This document shows, piece after piece, positions 904 to 53,079 of a DNA stretch of 64,000 nucleotides; position 1 is the first letter of the stretch; every line of letters starts with the position of its first letter. The notes beneath the pieces were generated by a model. That model had not been told where the DNA came from. It saw only the letters and a list, made by a program, of their open reading frames with translations, and searched no databases. Made by a program: the position numbers and the translations under genes. The stretch lies in NCBI RefSeq assembly GCF_032191835.1, contig NC_083235.1, positions 47,616,001 to 47,680,000 of the forward strand, in the 5' to 3' direction. This DNA comes from Heteronotia binoei (lineage: Eukaryota).

Positions 904-3900
904 ATGGCTCCAGTCTTATTTAAAATGCTGACATTTACAGTCATCGGGTGCCTCCTGACAGCACACAGTAAGACCTTTCTCTCATGTATAGTGTTTATTT
1001 TCTAAAATGCTCTATTTTACTACCTAATTCAAGATACATTGCCCTCCTTCTTTCAGTTCAGCCATCTCTATCAGATGAAAATGAGCATGACCCTGATGAA
1101 GATGGTAAGTTTCCTTTGGCAGCTGGCTGCATGCTCAGTGCAACCAAGTTTCTTTTTGTTGTGGTGGTTTCTTTAGGGTGGGTCTGGCCCCATCCTGGAT
1201 TAATTAAAGCCCATTTTGATTAAATTATAAACCAGCACTATCTCTGCACAAAATCTATAGTGCCTGTCTCCAAGCTGTATTTTTCCTTATTCTTTCAGTT
1301 CAATCATTTCTTCTAGACAGGGAATGATCACGAACAACAGAATAATGTCCCCCCCCGCCCCATTATAATAGTGAATGTAATAGAAAAAGAACAATAGTGG
1401 ATATTAGGTGCAGGGGTATCTGCTCCCACCTCAGATGAAGATATTATTAAAATATTGCTTGAGGCTTTAAAATGGGAACTGGGAAGCTGAAATGTTTGTT
1501 TGTATATTTCTCACTTTTGCCTGTGTTTCGGTGATTGGCATCAAGTTGAAAGATAACTAAATATTATACTGAAAAGATCAACACAGAGTTCCATTATCTT
1601 ATTTTTTTAAAACAGTTTTGGGGTGAGGGTGGGGTGTTAACCAAAACACTCTCACTCCGTAGCCATACCTCACTCACAGTTTCTCCATTCTAAAATCATC
1701 ACTAAGCTCAGCTGCTTTTCCTATTGCGAGGCTAAAATTAAATATATATGCACCTACCTTTTTGAATCCTACAGAGGGTAGGGAGGAGGGCAAAAAGAGT
1801 TGAACCTAGAATGTGCTTTAAAGCAGACAAAGGGTTAAGGTTTGTTTAGGATTGCTCATTGTACCTTTTCCATTTCACTGGCTTTTGACCACATTATTTA
1901 CAGTTCCCCCCCCCCCCCCCATGCCAGTTGTGTTAATGTGTCTACCACCTTAGGACATTTCATGCATCTGCTGAAGTAGTCACTAGCTCATAATAAATCA
2001 TTTTGGTTTTTAACACTTGGCATATTACAGTGTGATGTTTGAAAGTTAATGGTAGGCTCTTCCTGATCTGCTTTTCCACCCCCCTCAGAGCCTATGTCTT
2101 GTCCTACAATCAACAGTCCCTCAACAGAAGTTGCCATAGGCGAGAGTGTAACACTGAAGTGCTCCTCGAAAACATGTTCTCTGCCAGTTAACTACACCTT
2201 ATATAAAGGAAATGTCAGAGTGCTATCTCCTGCAAGCAATAAAGGAGAAGAGGCTGAATTTAACTTCACCATCAAATTAATCAGTGAACTGGGTGAATAT
2301 AAATGCAAAGCTGCAAATTTTAATGAAAGCAAATATAGTCTTGGTTTCAACTTCACACTGGGAGGTACGTGTGGTTTTTCCAGACACAAATTTCCAACTT
2401 CAAGCTCTGATCTTGAGACATGCCTTTTTACAGGGACAGTTCAGCTGTTATAGGCACTGGAGAAAGACCTACAGGGGCAATGGCCTGGGGCAATGGTCAC
2501 ACAAGGTGAGGAGTCTCTCATCTTACACTCAGGGGCTTTGACGCAACTGCCATCACTAGCCAGCCTTTATGGGGAGATCATGCCAGGGAGGAGGGTGACC
2601 CTTTTCCTTGGTAATTTTTTATCCTGGTAGGGTTGTATATTTGGATACTGCCTACCTGATAACATGCTTGATATTTGTGGTATCAGGTCAGGGTCAGCAA
2701 TATCCAGCCATTGCTCTCTTCCCAAATCAGGCATTGTCACCCCTGATAACACTGGATTCAAGAATCCTGTTGAGAGTGCAGGTGCTAAGAGATCTCTCAG
2801 CTCCATACATGAAAGCCCTATCAGTCCTGATAGATGAATGGAACCTTCCTGTTAATTAAATACCTAGCAAACAAGACAGGACATATTTTGTAAACTTTAA
2901 AATACTGTGTGCTTTCATTGTGCAGAAAGTGACACACATATAACATTCCTTCTGTAGACATACAAATGCGGAAGGCTGGCAACATTTGGAGTACCATTTT
3001 TCTGTCAGCATATTGCAACATGATGTTTAAAGATTAATGGCAGACTCCTATTTATGTGGCTTTTTGTTCAGAGCCTGTGTCTCAACCTGTGGTCTGCAGT
3101 TCCTCAACAGAAATTAGTAGAGGTGAGAATGTGACACTGTCTTGCTTCTCAAGGACTGGTTCTCTGCCCATTAAATACACACTATATAAAGGAAAAAACA
3201 GAGTGCGACGTCCTGCAAGCAAGAACAAGACAGGAGAAGCTGCTGAGTTTCACTTCCCTATCAATTTAATCAATGATCTCGGTGAATATAAATGCAAAGC
3301 TGAAAACAAATTTTCTACAGGAAAATATAGCCTTGGTTTCAACTTTACAATGAGAGGTATGTGTGCATTTTCATCAGCGAGAGATTCAGATCTTGAGAAA
3401 CACCAACTATGCGTTTTCACTGTTGGACACAAGAGACCCTGACAAGCTGAGTATTAACAGCTTGTAATAATCCCGCAAGGGAGATCCATATGAGTGTGTA
3501 GCATTTTGAACATATAAAGCTGCCTTATGCCAAGGCAGATCATAGATCCATCTAGCCCAGGGGTACCAAACATACAGCCTGGGGGATGAAACTAGGGCTC
3601 TTCTCCAACCCCTGAGCAACTGATGTGAGGAAGAGAAGGCAGGAGGCTGCTCAGGGCGAGCCAGGACAGGGCGTATGCGGTAAAGTGTGTGTGGTTAAAG
3701 CTGTCAAGAAATAGGAAGGAAATTGCTAGGGGTCAGGACTATGATGAGATAAAATATTGTGGTAGGAATGGCAGCAAAGATGGAGAAAGAGGAAGCATGG
3801 TGTTTTCCCCTTTTCTACCTCCTCTGACCGCAGCTGCATGAGGATTGGTGAAGCCATGGGGCATAGCCAGTGCTGCCACCACCACATTAAACAGGAACTG

Positions 3901-6900
3901 TGAGTGGGGGGGGGGGTTGGTGAGAGTGGGTATGTGGGGTGGTAGTCTGCCAATTAAGGGACAGGGCTGGCAGGGGAGAGAGAAGCAGGGCCAGCGCATG
4001 GATTGGGAAGAAATTGGGCTGTCTTGTGCATATCACTGAGACGAAAGATATCTCATTCTTGGAAATGAGTGGAAAGCCAAAGGAAAAAAAGGGATGCTGC
4101 TATCGCTGCTGCACACTGGACAGCTGCAGAACTGAGAGGCAGAGTGAGTGTTAGGGGGTGGGGAATGGCAACCACCCTTCTCTTCTACACCTGATCTCAG
4201 CCCATGAAAGAGAAAAGGTAGTTGGAGGACAAAAAGCTCCCCTTGGAGTTTTAAATAACAATCTCTCCTTTAGGACTTCCTGCTTCAACAGAAAAAGCAG
4301 AATAGATGAGAACTGGTGGTGGGTGGCTCTGGGAGAGCCAGGTTCAGACACCCCTCCTCCTGAGTCAGGAACCTATTGTCTGGATCACCCAGGGTGGTTG
4401 TTCAACCTGGCCCACCTCACAATGTTGTTGTTGGGGATGGGGCTATGGAAGGAGGAGTCCAGTGTGCCTTCTTGAGATCCTCAGAGGTAGGAAGGGGGGA
4501 AGAGAGGAAACAAATAGTGAGAGATAGATTGTAGCCATGCTAGGCTGCTGGGGCTAAGCATATGGGGGGGGGGGGGATTTGCTGAAAAACTGCCTTATTT
4601 ATGTGGTGAGGAAGATGACTCATTTCCTAAAAGTGCTATATATACAAAAAGGAATTAATTTATTTGGAAATATTCCATCCCCTTTATGGTACCCATTGGA
4701 AAAAAATACATTTATTGGGTTTTTTTGTGTGGATTCCTCAGTAAATCAATTGCTTTCACTCCTAGGAAACTTGTTTGTATTTTGAGTAAAAATTCATATT
4801 GTTAACTGGGCTTGCCTATGTCCTTTATAAAGTTTATTTCTCCTGTACTTGGCATTACATTTTACAGCACACATGGCCTGGCCTGACAAAGTAAAATTTA
4901 TGTCAGATCCATAGGGCTGCCAAGCGCTTGCCGGGGGTGGGGGATGGCACTACTGAAATGGGGATCTTCTGCATTCATAGCATGTACTCTGCCATTAAAC
5001 TTTACTATCCTGCCACCATTCTATGTGGGTTGAGTAGGTACACACCTTCCTATCTGTGTCATGATACCTATCTGCACCCTGTTGAGCTGCTTGGCTATAT
5101 TTTTTGGTATAAATGGGGTCATGGGCATCTGAGGTTTCTAGTTATTACATGGGAATATGTGTTTACAACTAACTACAACTGGGTTGGCGTCAGAACCTAT
5201 GTTTGCTATATACTTTTCTTAAATGAGGCCCAGAAATGTACCAAAAGAAGGAACCTAAAACTCTGAAGCAAAAAACAGACTCAGAAACATCAATTTAGGA
5301 GCACATCCTGTAATTTGTGATTACATCTGATTAAAAGACACTGGTTTTTTTAAGTAAAATGGAAAAAAAATGTATTGAAAAAGAATCATTACCATACCTA
5401 ATCATTACACCTTTTTATTAGCAGGAGAGGACAATAATACAATTTTGTTCATCGTGCCACCTCTGCTATTGCTGCTTTTGGCATTATTTTTAGCAATTCT
5501 GTTGCTTATCCTTCCCCGGCGTAAAGCAAGTAAGTTTACTTTTGCCTGCCTGTGCTTCCACCAATACTTTTCCCCCAAACCATGTGCACCCTAGAAATTG
5601 AAAACAGAATATAGTTTTACTTTCAGCTTGTCAACTGAACATGAGCCCTATCCTTCCATATGTGCCAATATGCTGGCTGGGGGAAAATGAGTAACTATGA
5701 TTTATTCCCTGTGTTGTGTGAAAACCATTTACTACCATATAGGGTTGCCAAGTCCAATTTAAGAAATATCTGGGGACTTTGGGGGTGGAGCCAGGAGACA
5801 TTGGGGTGGAGCCAAGATCAAGGCTGTGACAAGCACAATTGAACTCCAAAGGAAGTTCTGGCCATCACATTTAAAAGGACAGCACACCTTTCCAATGCCT
5901 TCCTTCCATAGGAAGTAATGAAGGATAGGGGCACCTTCTTTTGGGGCACATAGAATTGGACCCCCTTGTCCAATCGTTTTGAAACTTGAGGAGTATTTTG
6001 GGGAGAGACACTAGATGCTGTACTGAAAATTTGGTGCCTCTACCTCAAAAAACAGCCCCCCCAGAGCCCCAGATACCCGCGGATCAATTCTCCATGATTT
6101 TCTATGGGAATAAATTTCCATAGGGAATAACAGAGTTCCCAGCAGACATTTCCCGGCCTCCCCTCCCCCTGCTTTCTGACGACCCTGAAGCGGGGGGAGG
6201 GCCTCCAAACCAGGGGATCCCCTGCTCCCACCTGGGGATTGGCAACCCTACTACCATACGGGAAGTGTTTAAAGGAGGGGGTGGTGTTCCCAAATGGGAT
6301 CATGGAGGAGCAAGGAATAACAGGAAAATTTCCCCCAGTCCAGTTTTTCCTCTCCTGAAGAGTATTCAACTATGAAATTCAGTGTTGGGAGGAACAAACT
6401 GGAGGCCTGCAAATAAACGGGGAGGAAAGGAAATAATATGGAGAACTTCAGCTGGCCAATTTCCCATATGATTCTCCATCTGCCTTTATTTCCACCTATT
6501 CTCTTTATCCAGTTCTTTCTAGAACTTACTCATTCCTCAGCAAGTTGCTTTAGGAGGCTTTGGGGGGGGGCTAATTTATACTATTTTCTGCATGACTCCA
6601 AAGACGCACAAATATGTGGAACCATACCTTGTCTGTAGGGTGCAGTGAGCTATAATGATATGGATATAATGATGCTATTGATTGAATGTTAGATACAGTT
6701 AAGAATATTTGCATTGATATTGTGTTAGGTCCAGTGAGGAAAGTGACTCAGCCATACGATTCACTATTATCACATGGGCAAACCATTACCAGACTACATT
6801 ATTTTCCCAATGATGTAGAGAGTATTAAAATGGAGACCAAAAACTCTAGGAACATGTTGAATTAATTGCCAGCCAGAGCTCATGTAAAGTCCCTACAATG

Positions 6901-9900
6901 AGATCACCAAAAAAATTACATATTTTTGACAATTCACCACACAGGTCGTAAACTACTTCATAAAGATTCTAGGGATATGCAACAAACAAGTACATGTTGG
7001 CAACATGATAGTAGAAAATAGATTTATGTTACAGGTAAAACTACAAGCAGTGGTTGCTTCTTAAAGGACATGTCAGGAAATCGTCATGGATTTAAATTCC
7101 AGTAACAATCTTAATATTTTTAATTTATGTGGGTAGCCACCACAAGCCAGAATAATGGCAGGCTTTTCTGTGTGGCGCTCTGTTCTTTCGTTCTGGCCTC
7201 ATACTTCTTTCTGCATTTTTTTTTTTAGCTGTAGCTTTTGTTTTTTTCCTATTTTTCTTCCTCCTGGTATTTTTGAGACCACTTTTACCTGTCTTTTTCT
7301 GGAAGCTGATTTTGAGTCACCTTTTTTATGTATGTTTCTTTGTTTTCTTTGTCCCACCTACACCTAATTGAAAACCTTCCAAGGGTATAATGCCATAGAG
7401 TCCACCTTCCAAGGCACCTTCCAAGGATATAATGCCATAGAGTCCACCTTCCAAGGCAGCCATTTTCTCCAGGGAAACTGATTTCTGTAGCCTGAAGATA
7501 AACAGGTTACTCACCTGTAATTGATGATCTTCGAGTGGTCATCTGTGCAGTCACACACATGGGTTTTCCTATCAGGACGAACCCTACCTCGGAGATTTTA
7601 AAAAGCTAGCCTAGGCGTTATTTTTGGCGCGCACTCCCTCTCGCTCTGGGGAGCAGGCATCCACTGCGCATGCCTGTAGCGCGAGGGAGGCGCCCAACCC
7701 ACTCAGTTTCTTTCCCCGCCGCTGACATAATAGGAGCGCGGATATATAAGACAAGTAGCCAGCAGCGGGGACGGCTGGGCGGGCGTGTGTGACTGCACAG
7801 ATGACCACTCGAAGATCATCAATTACAGGTGAGTAACCTGTTTATCTTCTTCGTGGTCTCTGTGCAGTCCCACACATGGGTGACTGATAAGCTGACCTGC
7901 AAGGCGGTGGGTGCTGGCACTAGAGTTGGAGGAAGAAATAGTGCAAAGGTTAGTGCAACATAGTCAGCACATTATAGGCTATAAGGTAAGTAACTACTCA
8001 CCAAGCCCGGACCAGCTTCTTAGTCAAAGATGGAGCGAAGAACTGCCTGTCCGAAGGATGCATCCCGCCTAGCACGAACGTCCAAAGCGTAGTGCATGGC
8101 GAAGGTCGAGGAGGAAGACCAAGCGGCAGCAGCGCAAATGTCCTCCATGGATACACCCCTGGCAAGGGCAGATGACGTTGACAGAGCTCTTGTAGAATGA
8201 GCTCTTATGGCAGATGGGACTGGTTGCTTCGCGAGTTTGTAGCACAGCTCTATAGCAGCAACCAACCATTTTGATAGTCTCTGTGTAGATATCTTTTTTC
8301 CCTTATGACGGCGGCCGTAGGCCACAAAAAGTCTGGAGTCTGTGCGGAACGATGCAGTTCTATCTATATAAAAGGCGAGTGCTCTTCTCACGTCTAGACA
8401 GTGTAGAGCTTCTTGGCCCTTATCCGTAGGCCGTTGGAAAAAAGCAGGTAAGGTAGTGGTTCTATGCAGATGGAATGCGGAGACCACCTTCGGTAAGAAA
8501 GCGGGATCTGGCCGTAACACCACCTTATCATGGTGAAACATGGTGTAAGGCGAGTCCGCTCTGAACGCGCAGAGATCACTTGCTCTTTTAGCAGAGGTGA
8601 GTGCAACTAAAAGTGCCGTTTTCCATGAGAGGAGGTGAAGTGGTATCGTAGCCATAGGTTCGAAAGGCGGTTTTACTAGTTGGCTAAGCACTAGTGACAA
8701 ACTCCAGCTAGGATACATTTGCCGCAGTGGTGGGTGCAAATGTAAGATTCCCCTTAAGAAGGATTTCGCAGCAGGGTGTGAGAAAACAGTTCGACCCTGT
8801 ACATGCGGGTGAAAAGCTGAGATTGCTGCCAGGTGCACCTTCAGAGAGGAGTACGTAAGGCCCTTTTCTGACAAATGCAGTGTATACGCTAAGATTTGAG
8901 GCATGGAAGCCGAGGAGGGGCTGAAATTATGCTTGGTAGCGTAGATGGAAAACCTTTTCCATTTCATGGAATATGACTTCCTTGTTGACGGTTTCCTTGC
9001 ATTAAGGAGAACGTGTCTTACTCCTTCAGGAAAGTCTGAGAGCATATCCTCCAGGCCGTTAGGCGAAGCCTGTTCGGGTCGTGGTGCAGAACCCTGCCGT
9101 TCTGCTGGGACAGGAGGTTGTGTGCCAGAGGGAAGTGATGGTAAGTGTTTTCTGACAGGAGGAGAAGGGTTGTGAACCATGGCTGGCGTGGCCACCATGG
9201 CGTCACTAGAATGCAATCTGTGTTGTCCAGTTGAATTTTCTGTATGCACCGTGTTATTAGCGGAAAGGGAGGGAAGAGGAAGTGTAGTGGACCGGTCCAC
9301 GTTTGTATGAAGGCATCCCCTGCAGACTGTTGTGAGGGCGGACCTCTCATAAAAAAGATCGCACACTGTGCATTGTCTGGTGCAGCAAACGCATCTATTG
9401 ACGGAGTTCCGAATTTCCGGAATACTGGCAGAAGGTATGACCGGTGGAGTGACCACTCGTGGTCGTTGATGGAATATCTGCTCAGTCTGTCCGCTTGAAT
9501 ATTCTGTACGCCAGGAAGATGTACCGCAGTGAGGTGGATCTGATGGGCAATACTCCAATGCCACAGGTGCATTGCTCTTTTGCAAAGGCGGGTGGATGCT
9601 GTCCCTCCTTGCCTGTTTATATAAAAAACCGTCGCCACATTGTCTGAGGCGATTTGTACGTGTAGGCCTTGAAGAGATGGAAGAAACGATTTTAACGCTC
9701 TGTGAACAGCTAGAAGCTCTAAGCAATTGATGTGGAGCGACTGTTCGTACGGTGTCCATTGCCCCTGGACCGTGAGTACGTCGAGATGAGCTCCCCAGCC
9801 CCATCTCGAGGCGTCTGTTGTAACCACTGCTGAGGGGCTTGGCCGTAAAAAGGGCATTCCCGCAAGCAGGTGAGCTCGAACTGTCCACCATTCGAGCGAA

Positions 9901-12900
9901 GGGAGGATGTGGTTTGGAACAGTGAAGACCGTTCCTTGAGATTGGTGTTGGGGTCGAAACGCGCGGACGAACCAGATTTGTAGGGTTCGCATGCGTAGTC
10001 TTGCGTGTGTCAGAACTGCCGTCGTGGCTGCCATAAGTCCTAACATGCGCTGAATGTTGAAGGCCGGTTGTTTGGGTTGTCGCATTATTTGTGTGGCCAG
10101 CGTCTGAATGGAGGATATCCTGTCCACAGGAAGATACGCCTTGTGGTCCGTGGTGCACAAACGAGCCCCAATAAACTGAATGTCTTGAGTTGGGGTAAGG
10201 TGTGACTTTTGATGATTGACCTGGAGGCCCAGGTTTGCTAGGAGCGCAAGTGTGATGGAAATGTCCTTCATCAACTGCGTCCTTGAGGCTCCCACAAGGA
10301 GCCAATCGTCTATGTATGGGTAGGTTGCAACGCCGCGTTGTCTGAGGTATGCTGCAATAACCGCCATACATTTCGTGAATGTCCGTGGTGCCGTGGAAAG
10401 TCCGAAGGGCAGAGCTCGGAACTGGTAGTGGTTGTTGCCAACGGCGAAGCGCAGAAACTTTCTGTGGCATTGGTGTATTGTCAGGTGGAAGTATGCGTCC
10501 TGTAAATCTACCAGTGCCATCCAGGAGTTTCTGGGGATTAAGGGCAGAATCGATTGTAAAGTGATCATTCTGAATTTTCTGTGGCGGATGAATTTGTTTA
10601 GGGCTCTTAGATCCAGAATCGGGCGCTGTCCCCCATCCCTTTTCGGGACTAGAAAGTACCTGGAATAAAAACCTGTCCGATGATACTGGACTGGGACAGG
10701 CTCTATAGCCGCTTTGGCTATTAAGGTGTCTATAAGAATCATGGGATTCCCGTGCCTGTTAGCCGCCCTGAGCCCGCCTGGCGGGGAGGGCGGGATATAA
10801 AAATAAAATATTATTATTATTATTATTATTATTATTTCTTCCTGAAGGGAAGGTGATGGGGGAGTGGAAACAAAATGATGTCTTTTTGGTGGTGCTTGAA
10901 ACTCTATGGAGTAGCCCCTCCAAATAATGTTCAGAACCCATTTGTCCGTGGTTATTTGCTGCCAATTGTCGAGAAATGGAAGAAGTCTGGAGACGTGCTG
11001 AATTGGTAGAGGTAGAAAGTCAAAGAGACTGCTTTGATGAAGATGCAGCCTTTTTAGGTGGTTGTGGTCTCTGCTGTCTCTGGTTAAAGGATTGCTTTGG
11101 AGGAGGAGCCTTACGTTTCCAGTATTCAGATTGTCGAGGGGATCTGGAACGTTTGAAGGGCGTTGGTTTCCATGATCTGGGCTTATAGCTCTGTTGTTGT
11201 TGTTGCTGTTGGGCTACCCCCAATCTTTTCGCTCGTTTGCGGCTGTCGTCCACGGTGGAGAGTATATCGTCCGTTGTGGCATTAAAGAGACCTTGTCCAT
11301 CGAAGGGAAGGTCTTCTATTTTGAATTTCAGATCGGGCTGCAACGAAGAGGATCGAAGCCAAGCGTGTCGTCTTAGGGCAATTGAGGCGGCCATCGCCTT
11401 GGAAGTGCACCCCACAGAGTGACGGATGGTGTTTATCTGTTGCTTTGAAATCCTGTTGAGCTCCTGAAGCAGCTTGCAGGCTTGTTTCTGGGAGGGCTCA
11501 GGCAGGGCAGAGACGAGCGTATTCAGTTGGGAGGAGATATTGTGGGAATACGCGGCGAAGTATGCTAGGTAATTGTTGATTTTGGCAGTTGCCGTCGAGA
11601 TTGAATACATTTTCCTTCCAAGAGTATCTAACTTCCTGCCTTCCTTCTCAGGGGGTACCGGGTGGCGGGTCTGTTTAGTTTTAGAAGATGAATGCACTAT
11701 CAGAGAATTCGGTGCTGGATGGCTAAATAAAAATTTCGAATCCGGTGCTTGGATCCTATAAAGGGATTCAATGCGTTTTGAAGTTGGGGGAATGGAGGCT
11801 GGGTTGTCCCAAGCTTCTTTGATGGCTTCTAGGTGTACCGGCAGCATCGGCAGAAAGGAACCAGCAGGTAAATCTGAGTGCACCAAGTCGTGTACCACGT
11901 CTGTCACCTTGGGTGCATCCGAAGTAAGAGTTACGTTAAGTGCAGAGGCCATATTGGCAATCAAGTCCAGGTATGTCTTTGCCCCTTCGGACGGTGACAA
12001 ATCCGCGGGCTTGGCGATATCCGAGGCGGGGGACCCAGGGGACATGGACTGTATCGAGTCCGATGATTGAGCGTCGGATTCAGCATCAGAGTCAGGTTCG
12101 GGTTCAGGTGGGTCCGGTCTGGTTGGAGTCGTGCTTTTGGGTTCCACTGGAATCGCACCTCTAGGTTTAGAAGTCGAAGTGGAAGGAGTCGGAGACGGCT
12201 GTTTCGGTAGTTGCTTGCTCCGTTGGACAGGAGTCGCTTCCTTGGATGGGTTCCTGTGATAATCGGTTCGGTACCGAGAATGGTGGTATCCGCAACATGC
12301 ATGGGATTCGATGGAAGGAGACCTTGAAGCATAATGGCGTCGCCTCGGGGACATGGATGGGGACCGAGATCTCGGGTTGTAGCGATGGCGGTCCCTCCCT
12401 CTACTAGGGGATCTCTCCGGGAAACGCGTATGATGGTACCGATATCTCTCTATGCTGGGGGACCTGGCTGGGAACCGATGCGCATCGAAGTACCTGTAAG
12501 CGTCATGTTTGTACTGGATGGGATTCGACATATCGCGGAACGATCTAGGATCGATGTGGTGTCGAGTCCACTGTTGCGGGTCTCGAATCGGCTCCAGAGC
12601 AGGGTCTAGCATGGATCCTTGCGGGGAAGGGGATCGGGACGGAATAGGAATAACTTCTTCCGTCTGTTGGTGCGGCGACTCCGTAGCCGGGGTGGTCACT
12701 TCCTGGGTGTCGGATCCGGGAGTGGAGGGCTCGCATTGCGATTCGGGCTCGTTCTGTTGTTCGGAAGATTTTCTCGAGTCCCTCGGAATCTTCGGGTCCT
12801 TCGGGTCTGTCGGTTTCCGCGGAGCCTTCGGATCGGACGGTTTTCTCGAATCCTTCTGGCCCTTCGGGTCGGAATGCTTATGTTTCTTAGTGTGCTTCCC

Positions 12901-15900
12901 GCCCTTTGGTTTAGTCGCCGCGGCCGTTTGTTCTGACGTTCTCGCGCCGTCGCCGGCTTTCGCGGCATCGCCGGACTTATGCTTGCTGGGAACAATGGCC
13001 ACTGAAGCTGCCGACCGTGCGCCGTCCCCTTGGGGAGTCAGTAGGGGGGGCGACTTACTTGCTGACGAAGATTGCGACATATCAGGCTGGAGCACAGACT
13101 CCATTAAGTGGCTTCTGAGTCTAGCGGCTCTGTTTTTGCGCGCCTGTTTGCAGAATTGAAGGCAATGCGCACAGGCGTCCACTTTATGGGATTCTCCCAA
13201 ACAGAACAAGCAAAGCGAATGCCCGTCCGATGTAGGGATTTTCGCCCTACAGCGCGAGCACCTTTTGAAGGTTATTTTACTGTCCCTTCCTTCCATACGC
13301 CCGGGGGGGGGGGGTGGGGGAAGGGAGGTCTGAGGAAAAGCGGGGAAGATATTTATCTAAATTTTTTTTTTTTTTTTTTGAAGATAAGAATATGAAGAAA
13401 TAGCGAAGGATGAAATAAGAGGAAACTTGAAGAAAACGGAGGCTAGATATCTGAGGTAAGTGAGGAGCGCAACGAGGTAGGACTATCCCGGGCGGCGGTT
13501 GGAAAGAAACTGAGTGGGTTGGGCGCCTCCCTCGCGCTACAGGCATGCGCAGTGGATGCCTGCTCCCCAGAGCGAGAGGGAGTGCGCGCCAAAAATAACG
13601 CCTAGGCTAGCTTTTTAAAATCTCCGAGGTAGGGTTCGTCCTGATAGGAAAACCCATGTGTGGGACTGCACAGAGACCACGAAGAAGATCAGTTATAATT
13701 CACCACTTGGAGGCTGGCATCTCTACCTATGAGGAATCCTGAGATTTCTCTTTAGAATATCAGTTCTACTACAAATATAATTCACCTTTCTTTTCCCCAC
13801 ATACAGCATGTGAAATAACAAACAGCAATAAACTATTGTGGATTATAAGAATGTATGAAGCAGCCTTATATTCAGTCAGTCTATTTAGCTCAGCAGTCAG
13901 CAGTCTACTCTGACTAACATGGACATTTCCCAGGTCTCATGGAGAAAGACTTTAGAATGTCTTCCCCTATAATAGCTACCTGAGATACTTTAACTGCAGA
14001 AAGGGAGGCAGTTTTTTGTTTCTGGGAACTATTTTCCTTTTTTTCAAGAGCTACCAGCCACAAGATCGCAGATTAGTGGGTGAAGCCAGTCACAAAATGG
14101 CAGCTGATAGAAAAATCATGTTTCAGAGCAGCTCTGCAGTGCTAAGGTGGGGAAAACTCTCCTCTGTGAGGCAAGCACATCACCATCCCAAAAGGTTACT
14201 TTCCTTGCAGGGGAAAGTTATACAATGTTTTTGTTGGACAAGGCGGATTGCAGAATTGATAAGGGGAGGGGGAGTCAACAGCATTCTCCTTTCCCATCCA
14301 GAGCAAGGGGTGTGCGTGTGCATGAATGAAGGAGGATTAAATGTGGAAAGGAACTGGTGCTGAAATTGTCATCTTCCCATCCAGAGTAAAGGTGTGTATG
14401 TGTGTCTGTGCATGCCACTTTTTACATGAAAAAAGGAGAAAAGCTGCCACAGTACTTTTAGAGGGAAGAAAAATAAAGGAATTACAGCAGCACTAAAGAA
14501 AGGCCAGAGGGCAATTATTGCTTGGGGATTTACTGGTCACTCCTGAATGACCATCTGCCCTTGCCCTACCCCTGCTCTGAAGAAGCCAGGGATTGAACAT
14601 AGTGCCTTCTGCATGCAAAGCACAATTGACAAGTCAATGCTCCTCCTGTGTAGCTACAAAATCACCAAGGGTAATGATTGCCACTTCCTCAGAAACTCCA
14701 TAATAAAGATGGTAAATCTTTAAAATTTTGCTTCCTCTTGCAGGAAATCTGAGAGACGTCCCACCCACTGTTAACCCAGCAAGTTACCCAGGCCCAGAAA
14801 ATGATGTGACTTATGCCGAGATTGGTAAATTCCAAGAGAATTACTCAATATGTCTTTGTACAGAGAACTGTCTGCAGAAATTAGTAATATCTGGGGAATA
14901 TTTCTGATTTGCAAAAGAAAGAAGTAGAGAAATCAACAGCTCTTGCCTTACAAATTTATGCCTTCATGCAATATAGGGAGAGGGTGTAAATCACTGGAAC
15001 ATTATACAGAAGTTCTGTCAGGAAATTACATAGGTGGAAAGCCCCTCTTGCTCAGCCAAGTCAAAAGCACTATTATTAATATTACAGAAAGCTAGAAGGA
15101 AACATTTTGTCTTAGGCACAGGGAACAGATGGTATTTGGAGAAGTGAATTATACATGCATCAGATACATAGTTTCTACCACAAGCTAAGTAAGAAAGCAA
15201 TGGATTAATATCTAGTGCAGCAATAAGGTCAGTGCAAGGACACACATATTGTGATTGTCAGCTCCCCCTACTGTGGTAGCCTAATATGCCCTCCCCTCTT
15301 GCTCCTTAGGAAGAGGTGACCCCCCTGGAAGATTTGGGGTGGGGGTCTTTTGGACTATCACAACAGGAGGGACCTGAGAAAGTAATGCCCCATGCATGTG
15401 AGTCCTTGCACTTGTGGAAACACTGTGCTGGATCCAACTCAATGTATGGGAGGTACTAGCACTCTTGGTATAATTATAGTCAAGGAGACTCTACAGGGTT
15501 TACAATAAAAACATATAGAATTCATATCAGTCTAACGGTGGTTCCCCAGACATTAGGGATTTCAAAACAATCTCTGCAGCAATTAACATTGAATCGGGAC
15601 ACTTAACAGTTTGATAGGCCATAGCAAGGAACTTGAGCAGAATGTAGATCACTTTCTAAGTATTCTGCCAGTAGCAATCAAAGGCAGTGCTAGAAAACTG
15701 GCTAAGACGACAAGATAAATAACAGGCTTATCAGAAAGGAGGGGAAAATTACAGTATGAAGATTTTTACATTATGATTCTTGTTTTTTTTACAGTATGAA
15801 GCTCAAGAACTGTAGAGGTCAGCGTTCTAGTTAGATCTGTAGCCCACCCTGTCTAAAGACTCAGGGTGGGCACCTTATGAGGCATGGCTATAGCAACACA

Positions 15901-20844: not shown

Positions 20845-22581
20845 ACTTTATAAAGTCCCACCCAGTTATTATAATTCATCTTCTTTCTTCTCCTAAATAT
20901 CTAGGTGGTATTCTCAAAAACCACCCAATGGCCTTTTACTTTCCATTCTTTTTCTATATATCATCTGAAATTATCTCAATCCCTTTTAAATCCCTCTAAA
21001 TCATAGTATTTCAAGATTCTTGTAAGTTTATCCATTTCACTCCATAACATGACTTTTACAATCCAGTCCCATTTTTCTGGTATTTTATCTTGCTTCCATA
21101 ACTGTGCATATAATGTCCTAGCAGCTGAAAGCAAGTACCAAATTACAGTTCTATCTTCTTTTGGAAATTTCTCCATTTGTAATCCCAATATGAAAGTCTT
21201 TGGAGTTCTCTTAAATTCATATCCTAAAGTTTTAGAGATTTCTCGTTGAATCATTTGCCAAAACTGTTTCGCTCTTTCACAAGTCCACCACATATGGTAA
21301 AAACAACCTTCATGCTTTTTGCATTTCCAACATCTATCTGGCATCTTATTGTACATTTCTGCTAACTTTTTCGGAGTCATATATCACCTATACATAATTT
21401 TATAACAGTTTTCTTTATTATAACATGTCGAAATTTTCATAGAGTTCTTCCACAAGTATTCCCATGTTTCCATCTTTATTTCTTTATAAACATTAATTGC
21501 CCATTTTATCATTTGAGATTTTACTACTTCATCTTTAGTAGACCATTTCAGTAATAGTTTATATAATTTTGAAATCAACTTTTCATTATCTCCAAGCAGA
21601 ACATTTTCTAATTCAGTTTGCACTTTCCTTATTCCTTCATTTTTAATATCATTTTCCACCAAGCTCTTTATTTGTTGCATTTGGAACCAGTCATACTTAT
21701 TATTCAATTCTTCAGCTGTTTTCAACTCTATCTTGCCACCCTGTATTTTTAATAATTGATTATATGACAACCATCTTGCTTCCCCTGTCTCCACCGATAT
21801 TTTAATTACTTCTGCTGGCACTATCCACAACGGTTTCCTTTTATCTCCATATTTTCTGTATTTCATCCACGTATTTAACAAATTACTTCTTATATAGTGA
21901 TGAGAGAAAAAACCATCCATCTTTTTCTTCCCATAATACATATAAGCGTGCCAACCAAATTTATTTCCATGACCTTCCAATGCTAAAAGCTTTCTATTCA
22001 ACAGTCACCCATTCTTTTTTCCATACTAAACATACTGCTTCATGGTATAGCTTTAAATCTGGTAGCTGAAATCCTCCTCTTTCTTTTGCATCTGTTAAAA
22101 CTTTCATTTTAATTCTTGGTTTCTTTTCTGCCCATACAAACTCTGAAATTTTTCTTTGCCATTTGTTGATTTGTTTAATGTCTTTCACTATCGGAATAGT
22201 TTGGAACAAATACATAATTCTTGGTAAGATATTCATTTTTATTGCAGCTATTCTTCCAAGCAATGACATATTAAGTTTATTCCATTTTACCATATCTTCA
22301 TTCATTTTATGCCGCAGCTTTTCATAATTATTTTTATATAGATCAATATTTTTCATTGTAATCTCCACACCCAGATACTTTACTTTAGAGGTAACTTCGC
22401 ATCCCGTTAAATCCTGCAGTTCTTTTTGTTTACTCCCTTGCATATTTTTGCATAAAAATTTTGACTTCTCTTTGTTGATGTAAAATCCTGCTTTTTCTTC
22501 ATATTCTTCTATCTTAGCTAGTAATAATGGCGTTATTTGTATAGGATTTTCATTTATAAACATTACCTTGGCAAATGCTCT
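20602..22581 (-). mobile_element. 5'-truncated L1-clade LINE with frameshifted ORF2, poly(A) and TSD
   Basis: ORF pieces 21994-22590, 21384-22001 and 20976-21380 encode KYLG, LGRIAAIKMNILPR, GGFQLPDLKLY and the zinc knuckle CWKC...HMWWTC. T-tract at 20602-20609. Near-TSD aatccacac(a)cccttttt at ~20589 and 22582. G-rich 3' UTR with (TA)n at ~20813-20838. Confidence 0.9.
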
Positions 22582-23361
22582 AATCCACACCCCTTTTTAT
22601 CTCTTTATAAGACCCTGACAAGGCAACATAAGAAGGGTATGAGAAATAGCAGACAGACTTTTCAGAAGTTCAATACCACACACACACACACACATATATA
22701 TGTGCAAAGTGTTCTCTTTTTGATGTTCAATTTTTACTCAAATTCCACAATACTAAGACTGCAGAAGTCAAGGCACAAGACAGCAATTTTATTCCACTTA
22801 CCATTTGTTACCAACCCTCTCTTCAAATATGGTGCAACATTTCATGTACAGCCTGTAGGCATTTTATATGACACATACTGACATTGATGCAAATGTCATT
22901 TGTGTGTTAAAACTTTGGACTGTCTAGTGACAGCTTTAAGAGGATTTTTCTTCAAATGACAGTGACTTGTCTGATTTCAGCTCATCCGTTATGGTTTTCC
23001 AGTTTGTATGGCAGAACAAGGCAACACTATTGCATAACCTTGTGCTAATCTGTTCCATCTGAAAAGGTGATTAATTTAAAATAACTGCAGTACTTCCCAA
23101 GGCAGAAAAATCTCAAACTGAGTATCAGTAGAACTTACTCAGCTATGCTTGTATGGCATTTGGTTGAGAACTCAAAGCTGTGGCTTACCAGTCCAACAGT
23201 TTTATCTCCGCTATCCTCCTGTCTCACTTTGTATAAAAGAGCTCCCCCTGCTGAACAGTGCAGGGTACTGGCTTTTGTGGGAAAATTTGAACAAAATGGT
23301 TGGAGAAAATTTGACAAAATGCATCTGGACAGGAAAATACAAAATTATTTTTTATTATAAC

Positions 23362-32033
<8,672 letters not shown>

Positions 32034-34442: not shown

Positions 34443-36467
34443 CTCTTCATGGCTTTTGTGCAGTCCCACATAGTTGTGCAGGCCTGCTGCAGAGATCTTT
34501 TCCTAAAAACTCTAGAGAAGATTCTCCCCCCTCCTCATGGGCCGTCTCTTTCCTGCCCAGCTGGCACATGACAGGGTGGGGAGAGCACTCCTTTGCTCAG
34601 TCCTTTCTTCACTGTTGTGGAGATTGGATACTGCACTCTCTCCTGCTACTTACTTCAGGTTTTTTCTTGTGATTTCTCATTTCTACTGCTTTTTGATTCG
34701 TTGATCATTTTTGCATCTCAGAAGAAGAAATTTGTTTGTCTCCATTTTCCGTACGATGGCTGTATTCAAAAAGTGTCCTAAAAATGGCAAAATTGGATGA
34801 CCATGACTGTTGTCTCCAGTGCCTGGGTAGAGCCCAATTTGTCTGCTTGCCTGATTTGCAAGCAATTTACCTCAAAAGTTTGCTTTAATTAAGCTTCGGA
34901 GTTGAAAGCTGCCCTTTGGGGAAAGGCTTTGGCAGCTCCTAGGAACTGGAATTGAAGTGTAGGGCCCATATAACCCCTTTGGGGTCAATGCCACCAAGAT
35001 TCATATTGAAACCAGGCCTACTATTGGAACCAGCTCCAAAGAAATCTTCAACTTTGCAGAGTTCCTCAGAACCACCACCGCAAAAGAAAAAGTTTAAGTC
35101 CAAGCATAAGGCTTCTCATTCTTCCTCTACCCAGTCATGAGTGGATATGTCCTCCACCCAATGACCCCGGACCCCTTCCTCTACCCCAAGCCCATATCCT
35201 TCTCCTCCTTCCTCTGATTATGAGGTCACTAAGGTTCCTCCACAGTCCCCCTCTGTAGCTGAGTCTCCCCAGCAAAGCAGCATTCCAGATTCTGGGGTGT
35301 CTCATGCTACTGGGAACCACTCCCTCCACAATGGTTCCAGTATGCTCTGCTACCCATGTACTGGCCTATGCAGTGGGAACAGCCATTGCTGCTTTCTGTT
35401 GAACCAAACCCCCAGCCTCATTGTGGTCCACCATTGACATAGGTCAGCATGGGCCTGAATCCTTTGGAACTGAATGAACACAAGCTTCCATACATAGGTG
35501 GTTCCAACACTCCCTTGGAACCATCTCCCAACATGTGCATCACAGACTCTTCACTGTTTCTTCAACAGATGATCTCCACCTGTATCCTGAATAGTTGATT
35601 TATATGGCTAAGCCTCTCCACCTTGATGTGATCTGCTCTGAACTGACTGCTCCTGATCCTATCCTGAAGGTATACTATCCCCCCAATGTGGGCTTGGTCG
35701 CTTTTCTGATGCTTCTGGGCTTACTGGACGCAGCCAAAACCATTTGGCTAAGCCAGCATCCATCTTCCCTGTAACTAAGAAGATTGGTCTCTCCAGGGCA
35801 GTTATTTGCTTCCTTTGCTCTGTTGCTGGGGCCAACCCCAGGTGGACCTGTTTGCCTCCTCTTTGAATGCTAAGTGCCCCTAGTTTTGCTTGCTGGTTGG
35901 GGTGGATACTCACTCAGGGATGCTTTTCAGTTGACATGGCAAGGACCCGTTTTATGCCTTCCCCAGGAAGGTTCTCTCCAATATTTCAATGGATGAATCC
36001 CTCTGCATTCTAATTTTACCCTTCTGGTCTCCAAGGGTGTGGCTTCCAACACTGATTCCTGTCTGAAGGCTGCCACATGCCTCTGCCCATGGTGGGAGAC
36101 CGGCTTCACATAGGGCCCCTCCTTCTCCATGATGTCCAGTCCCTAAACCTGTTTGCTTGGCTGATGTGCAACCATTAGTGTTGCCCAGGTACTAGTATCT
36201 TCCAGATGCCCCTTGACAAGGAAGTTTTAGGCTGCCAAATGTGTAGGTTCTCCCCCATTTTCCCTAAGCAGGCACACATCCCTCCCTCCTTTCCCCACTG
36301 TGGGATCCTTGCGCTCACTGGTCTTTCCATGGCAGCAAGAAAAGGACTGAGGGAAGGAGTACTCTTCCCACCCTGTCACGTGCTGGATGGGCAGAAAAGA
36401 GGTGTGCCTGCACAAAAGACTACTTGATAAACAACAGTTACATGTAAGCGTGAAACCCTGTTTTCTC
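34443..36467 (+). mobile_element. Internally deleted, decayed DIRS1-like relic of a second family
   Basis: 5' end ctcttcatggcttttgtgcagtcccaca resembles the intact element's cttcttcgtggtctctgtgcagtcccaca. Inverted repeats at ~34546-34609 and ~36337-36401. Broken gag zinc finger ATG 34756 MAVFKKCPK / DDHDCCLQCLG. The 3' end resembles the intact 3' terminus. Confidence 0.7.
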
Positions 36468-41776: not shown

Positions 41777-48356
<6,580 letters not shown>

Positions 48357-51059: not shown

Positions 51060-51496
51060 GAGCGCTGAGGTCAGCTGGGAAAAACCAGCTGAATATCCCT
51101 GGGCCAAGGGAGACCAGATTGAAGGCCACCCGAGACCGGGCCTTCTCTATTGCTGCTCCACTGCTGTGGAATCAACTCCCGGAGGAGGTGCGGGCCCTAC
51201 GATGCTTAGATCAATTCCGTAGGGCCTGTAAGACCCACCTCTTCAAAATAGCCTTCAACCAATGACAAACCGGGAAGTGCCATTGAAAATGCTCCTTATT
51301 TACTGAATTCTGCTGAAGACGTAACGCTTAGTACCATGTTGATATTGCTATTGTTAATTTTAATAATTGTAAATTGTTTTAACTGTGATTTTATAAGTAA
51401 ACTGATGTATAATGTATTTTATGTTGTAAGCCGCCCTGAGCCTGCCCCGGCGGGGAGGGCGGGATAGAAATAAAAAGTTATTATTATTATTATTAT
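51060..51496 (+). mobile_element. LINE2 3' end (ORF2 C-terminus, 3' UTR, (TTA)n tail)
   Basis: Encodes RAFSIAAPLLWNQLPEEVRALRCLDQFRRACKTHLFKIAF; tail gtaagccgccctgagcc...gggagggcgggata...(TTA)n. Confidence 0.85.
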
Positions 51497-53079
51497 CAAC
51501 CCACGTGACAACAAGACCCAGTATACCATAAAGCAGAGGTATGGAATTCGTTTGTTATGAGGGCTGGATCTTACATAAATGTTGCTGGGCTGAGCCATGC
51601 ATGCCCAAAACTGTAACACAAGGTACTGGAGATATAAACGTCGTCGTAAAGCTGATTTCAGATGTCAAATGGCAATAGCAGATGAATAACAATAGCAGGC
51701 TTGATTAGATTAGGTGTGATATGCAGAGGAGTAGTAGCCGTGGAGATAACCAGCGTTGGTAGACAGGAAATCTAGGTCTCAGTTCCATCCAGCAGGATTC
51801 AGTCCAGGAGGATGCAAAGAATAAATGGACATAACCCTGACAATAGAAACCACAACACTCAGTTGCTGACCTAAGAGTAGCAATGCTCTTATAAAGGAAT
51901 TTCAAAGGGAGACTAGAAAAAGAAACTGCTGAATTGCAATGGATAATGAAGCCCAAGACTGAATTGAGAGCCAGTTTTCCTGCCTTATTACAAATGTGTG
52001 CTATTATCATTTTGGCATCTGAAATCACTCCACTCTCCAAGATATAAGGATCAATCCAAGTGTTTTAATTCTTAATCAGGATCCTTTTGAAGTAAAATAA
52101 GTCCAGATAAGAAACTCACTAATTTTTTTTTAAGGAGGAAATTATGGGTGGAAAAGTACCAGATAGATATTAGGAAAAAATTTTTTAGTTCAGCAGTGGA
52201 ATTGGCTGCCATAATGCACAATTCACATCTAAACAAACAAAAAAAATCAAAACATTCCAACATAGTAAAATAAACAGAATTTAAAATATATATGATAATA
52301 GGTACAATGAAGAAACTGAGCGCTAAAATGTAATATTATCATAATTTGGCTAACAGCCAAGATTAATTTCTTCCTTATATTTGTTGATAAGAAAATAAAA
52401 GCAGTCACCTTAAGAGTAACATCTAGAATAAAAAGTCTCCTCTGCAAGCACCAGTCGTTTCCAACTGCTTTCACAATGTTTTCACAGCACTTTTTACAGG
52501 GTGGTTTGCCATTGAATAGCATCAGCCAATAGAAATTTAATACATTCCTCTTCTGAGCCTGGAAAATTTGTAAGGAACTGGTTCAACACTGTTTCAAATG
52601 AGATCAAAATAGGGAGTTAGAAGAGTCCATCCTTTCACCCACCCATCCATCCTGCCTCCTTCTAAAGAAGAAGTGTGCTTGCACACAAAAGCTTATACCT
52701 GGAATAAAACATTGTTGGTCTTAGATCTGCCATGGGAGTCCAGCATTGTTGTCTCTCTCTTCTCCTTCTCTGTTCCCAAAAGAGGAGAAGCAGCCCCAGA
52801 GAAACAAGCAGAAGTGTGTGTGAGAGAAAGAGCTGCAGAGGCAGGCTTCTCTTTGTATCTTCGAGCTCTCCATGTGACTGTGTATGTGTGAGAAGGAAAG
52901 GAGGGGGGGAGAGAAAAGAGGCAGGAAGCGAAGAGCCATGGAAGGAGCTGGGGGGGAAAGCAAGGTAAGGCACAGCTGCAGCAGCAGCCCTGGAAAGGAA
53001 GCAGAAGGAGGTTGCTTGCGGGACCAAATTTCAGCCCTGCTTTGGCCACACATTTGACACTCCTGCCCTAAAGCATTTT

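What the first reader, a model, noticed from the sequence alone, without database searches (positions are those of the whole stretch)
7494..13689. Full-length, potentially mobile DIRS1 tyrosine-recombinase retrotransposon inside an immune-receptor intron
Seen: a 162-bp ITR core with no mismatch I could find, an ICR complementary to both termini, and no stops or frameshifts in gag (758 aa), pol (731 codons stop-to-stop) or YR (816 aa). The YIDD, RNase H D-E-D-D and YR R-H-R-W-Y residues are retained. Known: this is the DIRS1 architecture (circular intermediate, YR integration), a group missing from mammals and birds and little characterised in squamates. Inference: a very recent insertion from a possibly still active family.
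Basis: partly seen in the sequence, partly recalled or inferred. Interest (0 to 1): 0.8.

Follow-up and report, generated by a model that had tools for sequence, protein, structure and literature searches.

The report
Young DIRS1 retrotransposon with one lesion
This is a real, young and structurally complete DIRS1-type (tyrosine-recombinase) retrotransposon in a squamate-like genome, a kind already catalogued in lizards. A 102-bp piece of another repeat sits inside its polymerase gene, so this copy probably cannot move on its own.

Summary
On the minus strand, 7494-13689 is a 6,196-bp DIRS1-like element. It has inverted terminal repeats (174 nt, one mismatch, so a 162-nt perfect core). Its internal complementary region, 7785-7881, matches both termini exactly (65/65 and 38/38). 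The gag (758 aa), pol (731 codons) and recombinase (816 aa) frames are open, and YIDD, the RNase H D-E-D-D and the Cre-like R-K-H-R-W-Y residues are present.

Youth is supported: CpG o/e is 0.83 against 0.25 for the rest of the window, and contigs at least 99% alike occur in RNA libraries.

Two things were missed.
- Pol carries a 102-nt in-frame insertion (10734-10835) that all eight aligned homologues lack. It is a fragment of a repeat dispersed through the window, and it supplies pol's only ATG.
- In four relatives (grass carp, Pogona vitticeps, two assembled contigs) the gag frame continues past a single TGA for 962-1049 codons to the end of the recombinase. Here that frame has one extra stop, TAA at 10761-10759, inside the insertion.

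The copy is therefore probably not autonomous, though it may be mobilisable in trans. The "immune-receptor intron" context is only partly shown. DIRS1-like elements are already described in Anolis (775 copies). This is a new member of a known kind.

The parts
7494..13689 (-). Whole DIRS1-like element, 6,196 bp
   Evidence: Bounded by the ITR and ICR complementarities. RNA-library contigs that run from the left flank straight into the right flank place the boundaries at the GAAGAT hexamers (loose ends at 7499).
13501..13689 (-). Left (5') ITR: conserved core 13501-13674 plus outer 15 nt
   Evidence: Inverted repeat I1, 174 nt at 99%. The outer 38 nt (13652-13689) are mirrored in the ICR.
11020..13296 (-). 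gag ORF, 758 aa. N-terminal Cys/His motif, long low-complexity middle, conserved C-terminal core of about 300 aa.
   Evidence: ORF listed. The core is 39% identical to the gag of the Pogona copy, E 5e-58. Weak Pfam LAP2alpha hit and LAP2alpha-bearing Atlas clusters. LAP2alpha-type gag is reported for DIRS-like families (PMC9210276, PMC4495291).
11019..11025 (-). gag stop in the context CTT-TGA-C. Pol continues in the +1 frame and the recombinase frame continues in frame 0.
   Evidence: Context printed. The same cTT-TGA-CTc context is found in L001, L002 and L003, and TCC-TGA-C in the grass carp copy.
9018..11213 (-). pol frame (RT, RNase H, methyltransferase-like), 731 codons stop-to-stop, +1 relative to gag
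   Evidence: Pfam RVT_1 at 1.2e-22 and RT_RNaseH at 4e-6. It aligns end to end with eight DIRS pol homologues.
10734..10835 (-). 102-nt insertion in pol (34 codons). It is a fragment of a dispersed (AAT)n-headed repeat and contains pol's first ATG (10742).
   Evidence: Absent from all eight homologues. It matches other window copies at 28107-28176, 51425-51496 and 60963-61026 at 86-90%. It lies mostly within a low-confidence linker of the AF2 model: residues 111-154 have pLDDT below 50 and block 151-160 averages 54.
10759..10761 (-). TAA in the gag/recombinase frame, the only stop between the gag TGA and the recombinase stop
   Evidence: The relatives L001, L002, L003 and L006 have no stop there.
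8020..10470 (-). Recombinase ORF, 816 aa from its first ATG, in the same frame as gag. Its first 484 codons are overprinted on pol. The catalytic domain is 8020-9018.
   Evidence: ORF. There are 0 stops in the overlap, against a mean of 16.5 (minimum 5) in 3000 synonymous resamplings. Catalytic residues are conserved and the profile matches Cre.
7785..7881 (-). Internal complementary region. 7785-7849 mirrors the 3' terminus and 7844-7881 mirrors the 5' terminus. The two halves share the hexamer 7844-7849.
   Evidence: Inverted repeats I2 (65/65) and I3 (38/38).
7494..7715 (-). Right (3') ITR: conserved core 7542-7715 plus a 48-nt outer extension
7494..7499 (+). Terminal GAAGAT. It is repeated at 13684-13689 and present once in the ICR junction.
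   Evidence: Paralogous uninterrupted copies of the flanking repeat read GAAGAT followed directly by CAGTTATAATTC (table 7).

Best explanation
A young copy of a DIRS1-like tyrosine-recombinase retrotransposon lies on the minus strand at 7494-13689.

How it works, from the DIRS model in the literature: an RNA that lacks the extreme ends is reverse-transcribed, and the ICR serves as the template that restores and joins the two termini. The recombinase then crosses the joined ends with a short identical sequence in the genome, without a target-site duplication.

Shown here: the crossover sequence is visible as GAAGAT. It occurs once in the ICR junction, once in uninterrupted paralogues of the target repeat, and at both ends of the integrated copy.

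Inferred: expression is organised around the gag stop, CUU-UGA-C. Termination would give Gag. Pol lies in the +1 frame and starts its conserved part exactly there. The gag frame continues through all of pol to the recombinase.

This copy has one lesion. A 102-nt fragment of another repeat adds 34 residues to a pol linker and puts a TAA into the gag-to-recombinase frame. The copy is most likely a recent product of a recently active family, probably not autonomous itself, and at best mobilisable by proteins from other copies.
For: - Architecture and catalytic residues.
- Youth: CpG o/e is 0.83 in the element against 0.25 in the rest of the window. Termini and ICR are 103/103 complementary. All three frames are open. 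Only 4 of 124 (pol) and 1 of 45 (recombinase) columns on which all homologues agree are changed in this copy.
- Multi-copy, diversified family: RNA-library contigs cover all 30 bins in run X1, with 146 contigs at 99% or more. A word look-up in this scan's own index matched 43 notes for this genome, of which the eight shown were about DIRS elements (lead only).
- Crossover hexamer and empty-site paralogues.
- Insertion.
- Conserved layout in relatives: gag in frame 0, pol +1, recombinase in frame 0, a single TGA, and 0 stops in 628-712 overlap codons against 14-25 expected.
[quoted passage not shown] The junction-recombination model is in PMC3266345.
Against: - No genomic DNA reads or other genomic copies were available. 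Copy number, polymorphism, and whether the insertion is private to this copy are therefore unknown.
- The RNA-library contigs do not prove transcription. DNA can be present in such libraries, and no silent stretch was laid for comparison.
- At about 24 of the listed sites, none of the X1 contigs carries the window's base. The sampled copies, or the sampled animals, are therefore not identical to this one.
- The recombinase might be translated from the internal ATG at 10470, which would make the upstream TAA irrelevant.
- The 34-residue insertion lies mostly in a low-confidence linker and might be tolerated.
- Readthrough and +1 frameshifting are inferred from sequence only.
Confidence: 0.7

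Rival explanations
1. The copy is fully autonomous and active. On this reading the 34-residue insertion is tolerated in a pol linker and the recombinase is made from its own ATG at 10470.
For: All three ATG- or stop-delimited ORFs are open and the catalytic residues are intact. The insertion falls mostly in a low-pLDDT linker. No contig that skips the insertion appeared among the joints listed, although rows in that low-complexity stretch may be dropped.
Against: All eight aligned pol homologues lack the insertion. The frame it interrupts is kept free of stops over 962-1049 codons in four relatives from fish to lizard, including long stretches upstream of their first ATG at codons 97-376. That argues the frame is entered at the gag stop rather than at an internal ATG.
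Confidence: 0.2
2. The copy is an old, fixed, inert relic whose open frames survive by chance or by gene conversion, and the family is no longer active.
For: At about 24 of the listed sites no X1 contig carries the window's base. Most laid contigs are only 90-95% alike. ITR identity is not a reliable clock in this group.
Against: CpG o/e is 0.83 in a background of 0.25. About 5.4 kb of coding sequence has no stop or frameshift in its main frames. Termini and ICR are 103/103 complementary. 146 contigs are at least 99% alike.
Confidence: 0.08
3. The element is an assembly artefact, that is, a consensus of several copies collapsed into this locus.
For: The family is multi-copy, and no read-level DNA evidence could be obtained for this locus.
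Against: The window has no N runs. The two flanks join into one continuous repeat sequence in paralogues, exactly at the hexamer. No contig skipping the insertion was among the listed joints, although rows in that low-complexity stretch may be dropped.
Confidence: 0.02

Closest known systems
AcDIRS1 / AcDIRS2 of Anolis carolinensis (DIRS1-like superfamily; Piednoel et al. 2011, PMC3266345)
   Same: Same host class and similar size (5938 and 5997 bp against 6196 bp). Same plan: ITRs with a conserved core (136-140 nt against 162-174 nt), a two-part ICR (39-60 nt against 38-65 nt), gag, RT/RH/MT and YR. AcDIRS2 has a long ORF overlap. AcDIRS1 has a CTT/AAG-type junction.
   Different: The nearest proteins found are only 52-56% identical, so this is a distinct lineage or family. 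The junction homology visible here is 6 nt, against the 3 nt described. This copy carries a foreign 102-nt insertion.
Pogona vitticeps genomic copy (locus L003, 4914-10973)
   Same: 6,060 bp with ITRs of 167 nt and an ICR of 40+58 nt exactly complementary to the termini. gag is 780 aa, pol about 731-735 codons, and the recombinase frame is 962 codons. The frame layout is identical (0, +1, 0) and so is the CTT-TGA-C gag stop.
   Different: Amino-acid identity is 39% in the gag core, 44% in pol and 52% in the recombinase. Its ITRs are only 94% alike. It has no insertion in pol and no stop in frame 0. The overlap of the two ICR halves is 1 nt.
DIRS-1 of Dictyostelium discoideum (founding member)
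   Same: ITRs, ICR, gag, overlapping YR and RT/RH/MT ORFs. In DIRS-1 the ICR was shown to be essential and the reverse transcriptase to act in trans (PMC7192593).
   Different: It is very distant in sequence and is 4.8 kb long. The mechanistic experiments exist only for that element. Nothing has been tested in a vertebrate.
Cre and other tyrosine recombinases
   Same: The catalytic HxxR...W...Y block aligns with Cre H289/R292/W315/Y324 (Cre residue numbers are from my own knowledge). The 6-nt identity between junction and target is the size of a typical YR strand-exchange region (established knowledge).
   Different: The sequence match is marginal (E 6e-5 with a profile). Here the recombinase belongs to a retroelement and integrates a cDNA-derived molecule.

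Membership tests
DIRS1-like superfamily (order DIRS) | Ty3/Gypsy-related RT and RNase H with catalytic YxDD and D-E-D-D | tested here: met
   Pfam RVT_1 at 1.2e-22 and RT_RNaseH at 4e-6. YIDD and D467/E499/D524/D575 fall in invariant columns.
DIRS1-like superfamily (order DIRS) | Methyltransferase-like domain downstream of RNase H. This separates DIRS1-like from Ngaro and VIPER. | tested here: met
   The C-terminal ~180 residues of pol align with eight DIRS pol homologues, with many invariant columns up to residue 721. Several relatives carry a precomputed Pfam PF05869 (Dam) hit. This copy gave no Dam hit at E<=0.01.
DIRS1-like superfamily (order DIRS) | [quoted passage not shown] | tested here: met
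   R145, K177, H274, R277, W300 and Y310 are conserved. The profile matches Cre/Tre. Weak Phage_int_SAM hits. The catalytic domain starts right after the pol stop.
DIRS1-like superfamily (order DIRS) | Inverted terminal repeats, as opposed to the split direct repeats of PAT and Ngaro | tested here: met
   174-nt arms at 99%.
DIRS1-like superfamily (order DIRS) | ICR made of two parts complementary to the two termini, overlapping at the circular junction | tested here: met
   65/65 and 38/38 complementarity, with the two parts overlapping at 7844-7849.
DIRS1-like superfamily (order DIRS) | No target-site duplication: the same short sequence at both ends, identical to the junction and present once in the target | tested here: met
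   GAAGAT is at both ends and once in the ICR. Paralogues of the target repeat carry it once. The identity is 6 nt, against the 3 nt described in PMC3266345, and rests on one insertion only.
DIRS1-like superfamily (order DIRS) | gag-like ORF1 of the LAP2alpha type | tested here: met
   Pfam LAP2alpha at E 2.7e-4, below the curated cut-off. 39% identity to the Pogona DIRS gag. Atlas clusters with LAP2alpha.
Autonomous, currently active copy | Coding capacity equal to that of intact relatives | tested here: not met
   A 34-codon foreign insertion in pol and a TAA in the frame that relatives keep open from the gag stop to the recombinase end.
Autonomous, currently active copy | Transcription of this copy | tested here: inconclusive
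   Family sequences are present in four RNA-library runs of one study. These are assembled contigs only, no control stretch was laid, and at about 24 of the listed sites no X1 contig shows the window's base.
Autonomous, currently active copy | Insertion polymorphism or new insertions in the population | not testable with these tools
   No DNA run of the host was served.

The most novel reading that the evidence does not exclude
In vertebrate DIRS1-like elements the single gag stop may be a three-way recoding switch.

- Termination would give Gag.
- A +1 shift would give Gag-Pol. CUU-UGA-C is the heptamer of the bacterial prfB frameshift site, and the UCC-UGA of the grass carp copy resembles the antizyme site (both from my own knowledge).
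- UGA readthrough would give a Gag-X-recombinase fusion. Its middle part of about 630-710 residues would be overprinted on the whole of RT/RNase H/MT.

The layout is conserved from a cyprinid fish to lizards. This window's copy would then be a natural lesion case, in which a foreign insertion leaves the +1 frame open but closes the readthrough frame.

A second, smaller point: the crossover homology at integration appears to be 6 nt, the size of a classical tyrosine-recombinase overlap region, and not the 3 nt described.
Probability: 0.35. Interest if true: 0.7.

Novelty: new member of a known kind. Interest (0 to 1): 0.35.

Why it matters
As an object it is ordinary. DIRS1-like elements with exactly this plan are catalogued in lizards, frogs, turtles and fish, and young TE copies are common in squamate genomes.

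Its value is as a clean specimen in three respects.
- Both ends, the ICR junction and uninterrupted paralogues of the target are visible together, so the recombinase crossover sequence can be read directly.
- Comparison with relatives shows that the recombinase frame is kept open from the gag stop through all of pol. The expression strategy of DIRS elements has never been worked out experimentally in an animal, and the papers I could search do not discuss it.
- If the family is active, it is one of the few tyrosine-recombinase retroelements in an amniote that could be studied in vivo.

An antisense 6-kb insertion next to Ig-like receptor exons could also affect that gene, but this was not tested.

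Tried and rejected
- Exact look-up of the gag protein in public assemblies found nothing on record.
- Protein searches with pol, with the recombinase and with a 157-aa piece spanning the insertion found no close relative, only 52-56% identity or less. I could therefore not tell from other copies whether the insertion is private to this locus.
- Run searches found no DNA run of the host, only four RNA-library runs of one study kept as contigs. No copy number, start, end or strand could be read from them.
- BLAST of the element against the rest of the window found no second DIRS copy.
- Earlier notes by place (near) and by sequence returned nothing.
- A downstream exon of the Ig-like gene was not found. 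tblastn with the two Ig exons found no further Ig exon. The candidate ORF 35165-35434 had no Pfam hit.
- I looked for a target-site duplication around the 102-nt insertion and saw none that was convincing.
- ITR identity as an age estimate was rejected. The Pogona copy has open gag, pol and recombinase frames but ITRs only 94% alike.
- The Varanus (L004) and Pelodiscus (L005) copies do not keep the layout. L004 has different frames and L005 has two frame-0 stops. I took them as degraded copies and did not count them as support.


Full report
**Observation**

The element lies on the minus strand at 7494-13689 (6,196 bp). The repeat finder gave three inverted pairs:
- 7542-7715 with 13501-13674: 174 nt, 99% complementary;
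- 7494-7558 with 7785-7849: 65 nt, 100%;
- 7844-7881 with 13652-13689: 38 nt, 100%.

A script found the single ITR mismatch at 7553.

The region 7785-7881 is therefore an internal complementary region (ICR) whose two halves mirror the two termini. They share the hexamer 7844-7849.

- gag 13296..11020, 758 aa;
- pol 11213..9021, 731 codons stop-to-stop;
- a recombinase ORF 10470..8020, 816 aa.

The window has no N and no second DIRS copy.

**Identity**

Pfam finds RVT_1 (1.2e-22) and RT_RNaseH in pol, weak Phage_int_SAM hits in the recombinase ORF and a weak LAP2alpha hit in gag.

Pol aligns end to end with eight homologues from reptiles, fish and unnamed assemblies at 37-50% identity. YIDD and the RNase H D-E-D-D fall in invariant columns, and conservation runs through the C-terminal methyltransferase-like part.

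The recombinase domain (residues 485-816 of its ORF) is 39-56% identical to the 13 homologues aligned with it, from Varanus komodoensis, Chelydra serpentina (a turtle), Eublepharis macularius, Anolis sagrei, Sceloporus undulatus, coelacanth, a frog, a fish and unnamed contigs. R145, K177, H274, W300 and Y310 are invariant and R277 nearly so. A profile of that alignment matches Cre/Tre over the HxxR...W...Y block.

The gag core is 39% identical to the gag of a Pogona vitticeps DIRS copy and falls with LAP2alpha-bearing clusters. LAP2alpha-type gag is described for DIRS-like families (PMC9210276, PMC4495291).

Every defining feature of the DIRS1-like superfamily listed by Piednoel et al. (PMC3266345) was tested and met.

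**Integration site**

The plus strand reads ...GTAGCCT-GAAGAT-AAACAGG... at the low end and ...CACGAA-GAAGAT-CAGTTATAATTC... at the high end. The ICR holds this hexamer once.

Contigs from RNA libraries that match the left flank up to 7499 continue with CAGTTATAATTCC. That is what follows 13689 in the window (table 7).

The two flanks are thus one dispersed repeat, and its uninterrupted paralogues carry GAAGAT once. This is the pattern expected from the published model: recombination between the joined termini and an identical short genomic sequence, without a target-site duplication (PMC3266345, PMC7192593).

The identity here is 6 nt rather than the 3 nt described. It rests on this one insertion; in the Pogona copy the two ICR halves overlap by only 1 nt.

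**Age**

- CpG o/e is 0.83 in the element and 0.25 in the rest of the window. The Pogona copy has 0.70 against 0.18 in its flanks.
- The termini and the ICR, which the model regenerates at each cycle, are 103/103 complementary.
- No main frame has a stop or a shift.
- This copy differs at only 4 of 124 pol columns and 1 of 45 recombinase columns on which all homologues agree.
- ITR identity is not a clock here. The Pogona copy has open gag, pol and recombinase frames with ITRs 94% alike.

**Family**

No DNA run of the host was available. Four RNA-library runs of one study hold family sequences as contigs.

In run X1, 866 contigs were laid on the element: 146 at 99% or more, 235 at 95-99% and 485 at 90-95%. 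They cover all 30 bins. This shows a multi-copy, diversified family with very close relatives of this copy.

It does not prove transcription. At about 24 of the listed sites no X1 contig carries the window's base.

A word look-up in the scan's own index matched 43 notes for this genome; the eight shown were about DIRS elements. That is a lead only.

The alignment shows 34 extra residues in this pol, between the conserved N-terminal helices and the RT body. All eight homologues lack them.

The 102 nt (10734-10835) begin with an (ATA)n run followed by a GC-rich motif. They match other copies of a short dispersed repeat at 28107-28176, 51425-51496 and 60963-61026 at 86-90%.

The insertion is in frame and has no stop in the pol frame. 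It also contains the only ATG of the pol frame upstream of the RT (10742); the 157 codons before it have no Met.

In an AlphaFold model the insertion falls mostly in a low-confidence linker. Residues 111-154 have pLDDT below 50 and block 151-160 averages 54, so it might be tolerated in pol.

I fetched relatives for comparison:
- two assembled contigs with about 50% amino-acid identity (L001, L002);
- a Pogona vitticeps genomic copy (L003, 4914-10973);
- a grass carp copy (L006);
- two degraded copies (L004 from Varanus, L005 from Pelodiscus).

L001, L002 and L003 share this window's layout. gag is in frame 0, pol is +1, and the recombinase is in frame 0. In L006 the recombinase frame is likewise one behind pol, and the ORF upstream of its TGA, in that same frame, is gag-like.

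In all four intact relatives the stop that ends gag is the only stop in frame 0 until the recombinase stop, 962-1049 codons later. It is TGA in the context cTT-TGA-CTc in the three closest and TCC-TGA-C in the carp.

Synonymous resampling of pol gives 14-25 expected stops in the overlap (minimum 4-12 in 1000 trials), against 0 observed. In this window the figures are 16.5 expected against 0 observed over 484 codons, and the third frame has 20 stops.

In the relatives the first Met of that frame comes only at codons 97-376. The frame is thus kept open well upstream of any ATG. That argues it is entered at the gag stop.

In this window, frame 0 has exactly one additional stop, TAA at 10761-10759, and it lies inside the insertion.

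**Mechanism**

Shown: the architecture, the crossover hexamer, the conserved frame layout and the position of the lesion.

[quoted passage not shown] All of this is from Dictyostelium only (PMC7192593).

Inferred:
- Gag-Pol arises by a +1 shift at CUU-UGA-C. This heptamer is the prfB frameshift site, which I know from memory and did not test.
- A Gag-X-recombinase product arises by UGA readthrough.

Neither idea appears in the DIRS papers I could search. [quoted passage not shown] First-stage notes on other windows of this genome raise the same ideas. They are not independent evidence, but I tested the open-frame claim on relatives from other species and it holds.

On this reading the copy could still make Gag and an altered Gag-Pol. 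It could not make the readthrough product, and would depend on other copies.

**Context**

Two Ig-like exons, 59% identical to each other, lie at about 2088-2432 and 3068-3421 on the plus strand (Pfam Ig_2, Ig_C17orf99).

A DEAD-box helicase C-terminal exon lies at 42375-42728 on the minus strand.

The element is 4 kb downstream of the Ig exons and antisense to them. I found no later exon of that gene, so 'intron' is plausible but not shown.

**Verdict**

This is a genuine, young, structurally complete DIRS1-like element and a new member of a known kind. DIRS1-like elements are well documented in Anolis, with 775 copies, AcDIRS1 of 5938 bp and AcDIRS2 of 5997 bp (PMC3266345). They are reported absent from mammals, birds and alligator (PMC4350176).

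The claim that this copy is potentially mobile is weakened by the insertion. The more interesting by-product is the conserved single-stop layout linking gag, pol and the recombinase.

Noticed in passing
window 10734-10835, 28107-28176, 51425-51500, 60963-61030 (also 26229-26245): A short dispersed repeat: an (AAT)n run followed by a conserved GC-rich core containing GGCTCAGGGCGGCT. There are at least four to five copies in 64 kb, and it is very abundant in the RNA-library contigs (depth about 2,600 at 10775-10779 in run X1, against about 100 in neighbouring bins). It is probably the 3' part of a SINE- or LINE-mobilised element. It was not identified.
   Followed up: partly
window 7374-7493 and 13690-about 13760: The DIRS element sits inside a copy of another abundant dispersed repeat. 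That repeat includes a 42-bp tandem duplication at 7374-7457. Contig depth over 7450-7649 reaches thousands, and about 22,000 in a run of a different organism (X3). A loose paralogue lies at 28380-28460 on the minus strand.
   Followed up: partly
window 2067-2450 and 3038-3439 (+): Two tandem Ig-like domain exons, 59% identical to each other (Pfam Ig_2, Ig_3, Ig_C17orf99). The gene was not named and no further Ig exon is present in the window.
   Followed up: partly
window 42375-42728 (-): An exon encoding the end of a DEAD-box helicase C-terminal domain (Pfam Helicase_C, 1.8e-8), with the motif [13 protein letters not shown]. From memory it resembles DDX5/DDX17. A GC-richer stretch at about 48-50 kb may be its promoter region.
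   Followed up: no
window 20979-22596 (-): Three adjacent ORFs (135, 206 and 200 aa) with weak RVT_1 and zf-RVT hits, in an AT-rich stretch. Probably a decayed LINE.
   Followed up: no
window 13297-13500: The 5' untranslated part of the element holds a G run of about 12 and a T run of about 20 on the plus strand. The read-laying tool skipped 13350-13449 as a repeat. Whether these runs are original or expanded in this copy is unknown.
   Followed up: no
L005 (Pelodiscus sinensis) 6732 and 6759: A turtle DIRS copy inside a RAD51-paralogue gene keeps the gag/pol/recombinase frame layout. It has two frame-0 stops 27 nt apart after the gag stop, a small local lesion in the same frame as in this window.
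   Followed up: no
L006 (grass carp) 5536-6987: The fish gag shares an N-terminal Cys/His motif (C-x2-C ... H-x2-C-x2-C ... H ... C-x2-C) with this window's gag, although the rest of gag is not detectably similar by tblastn.
   Followed up: no
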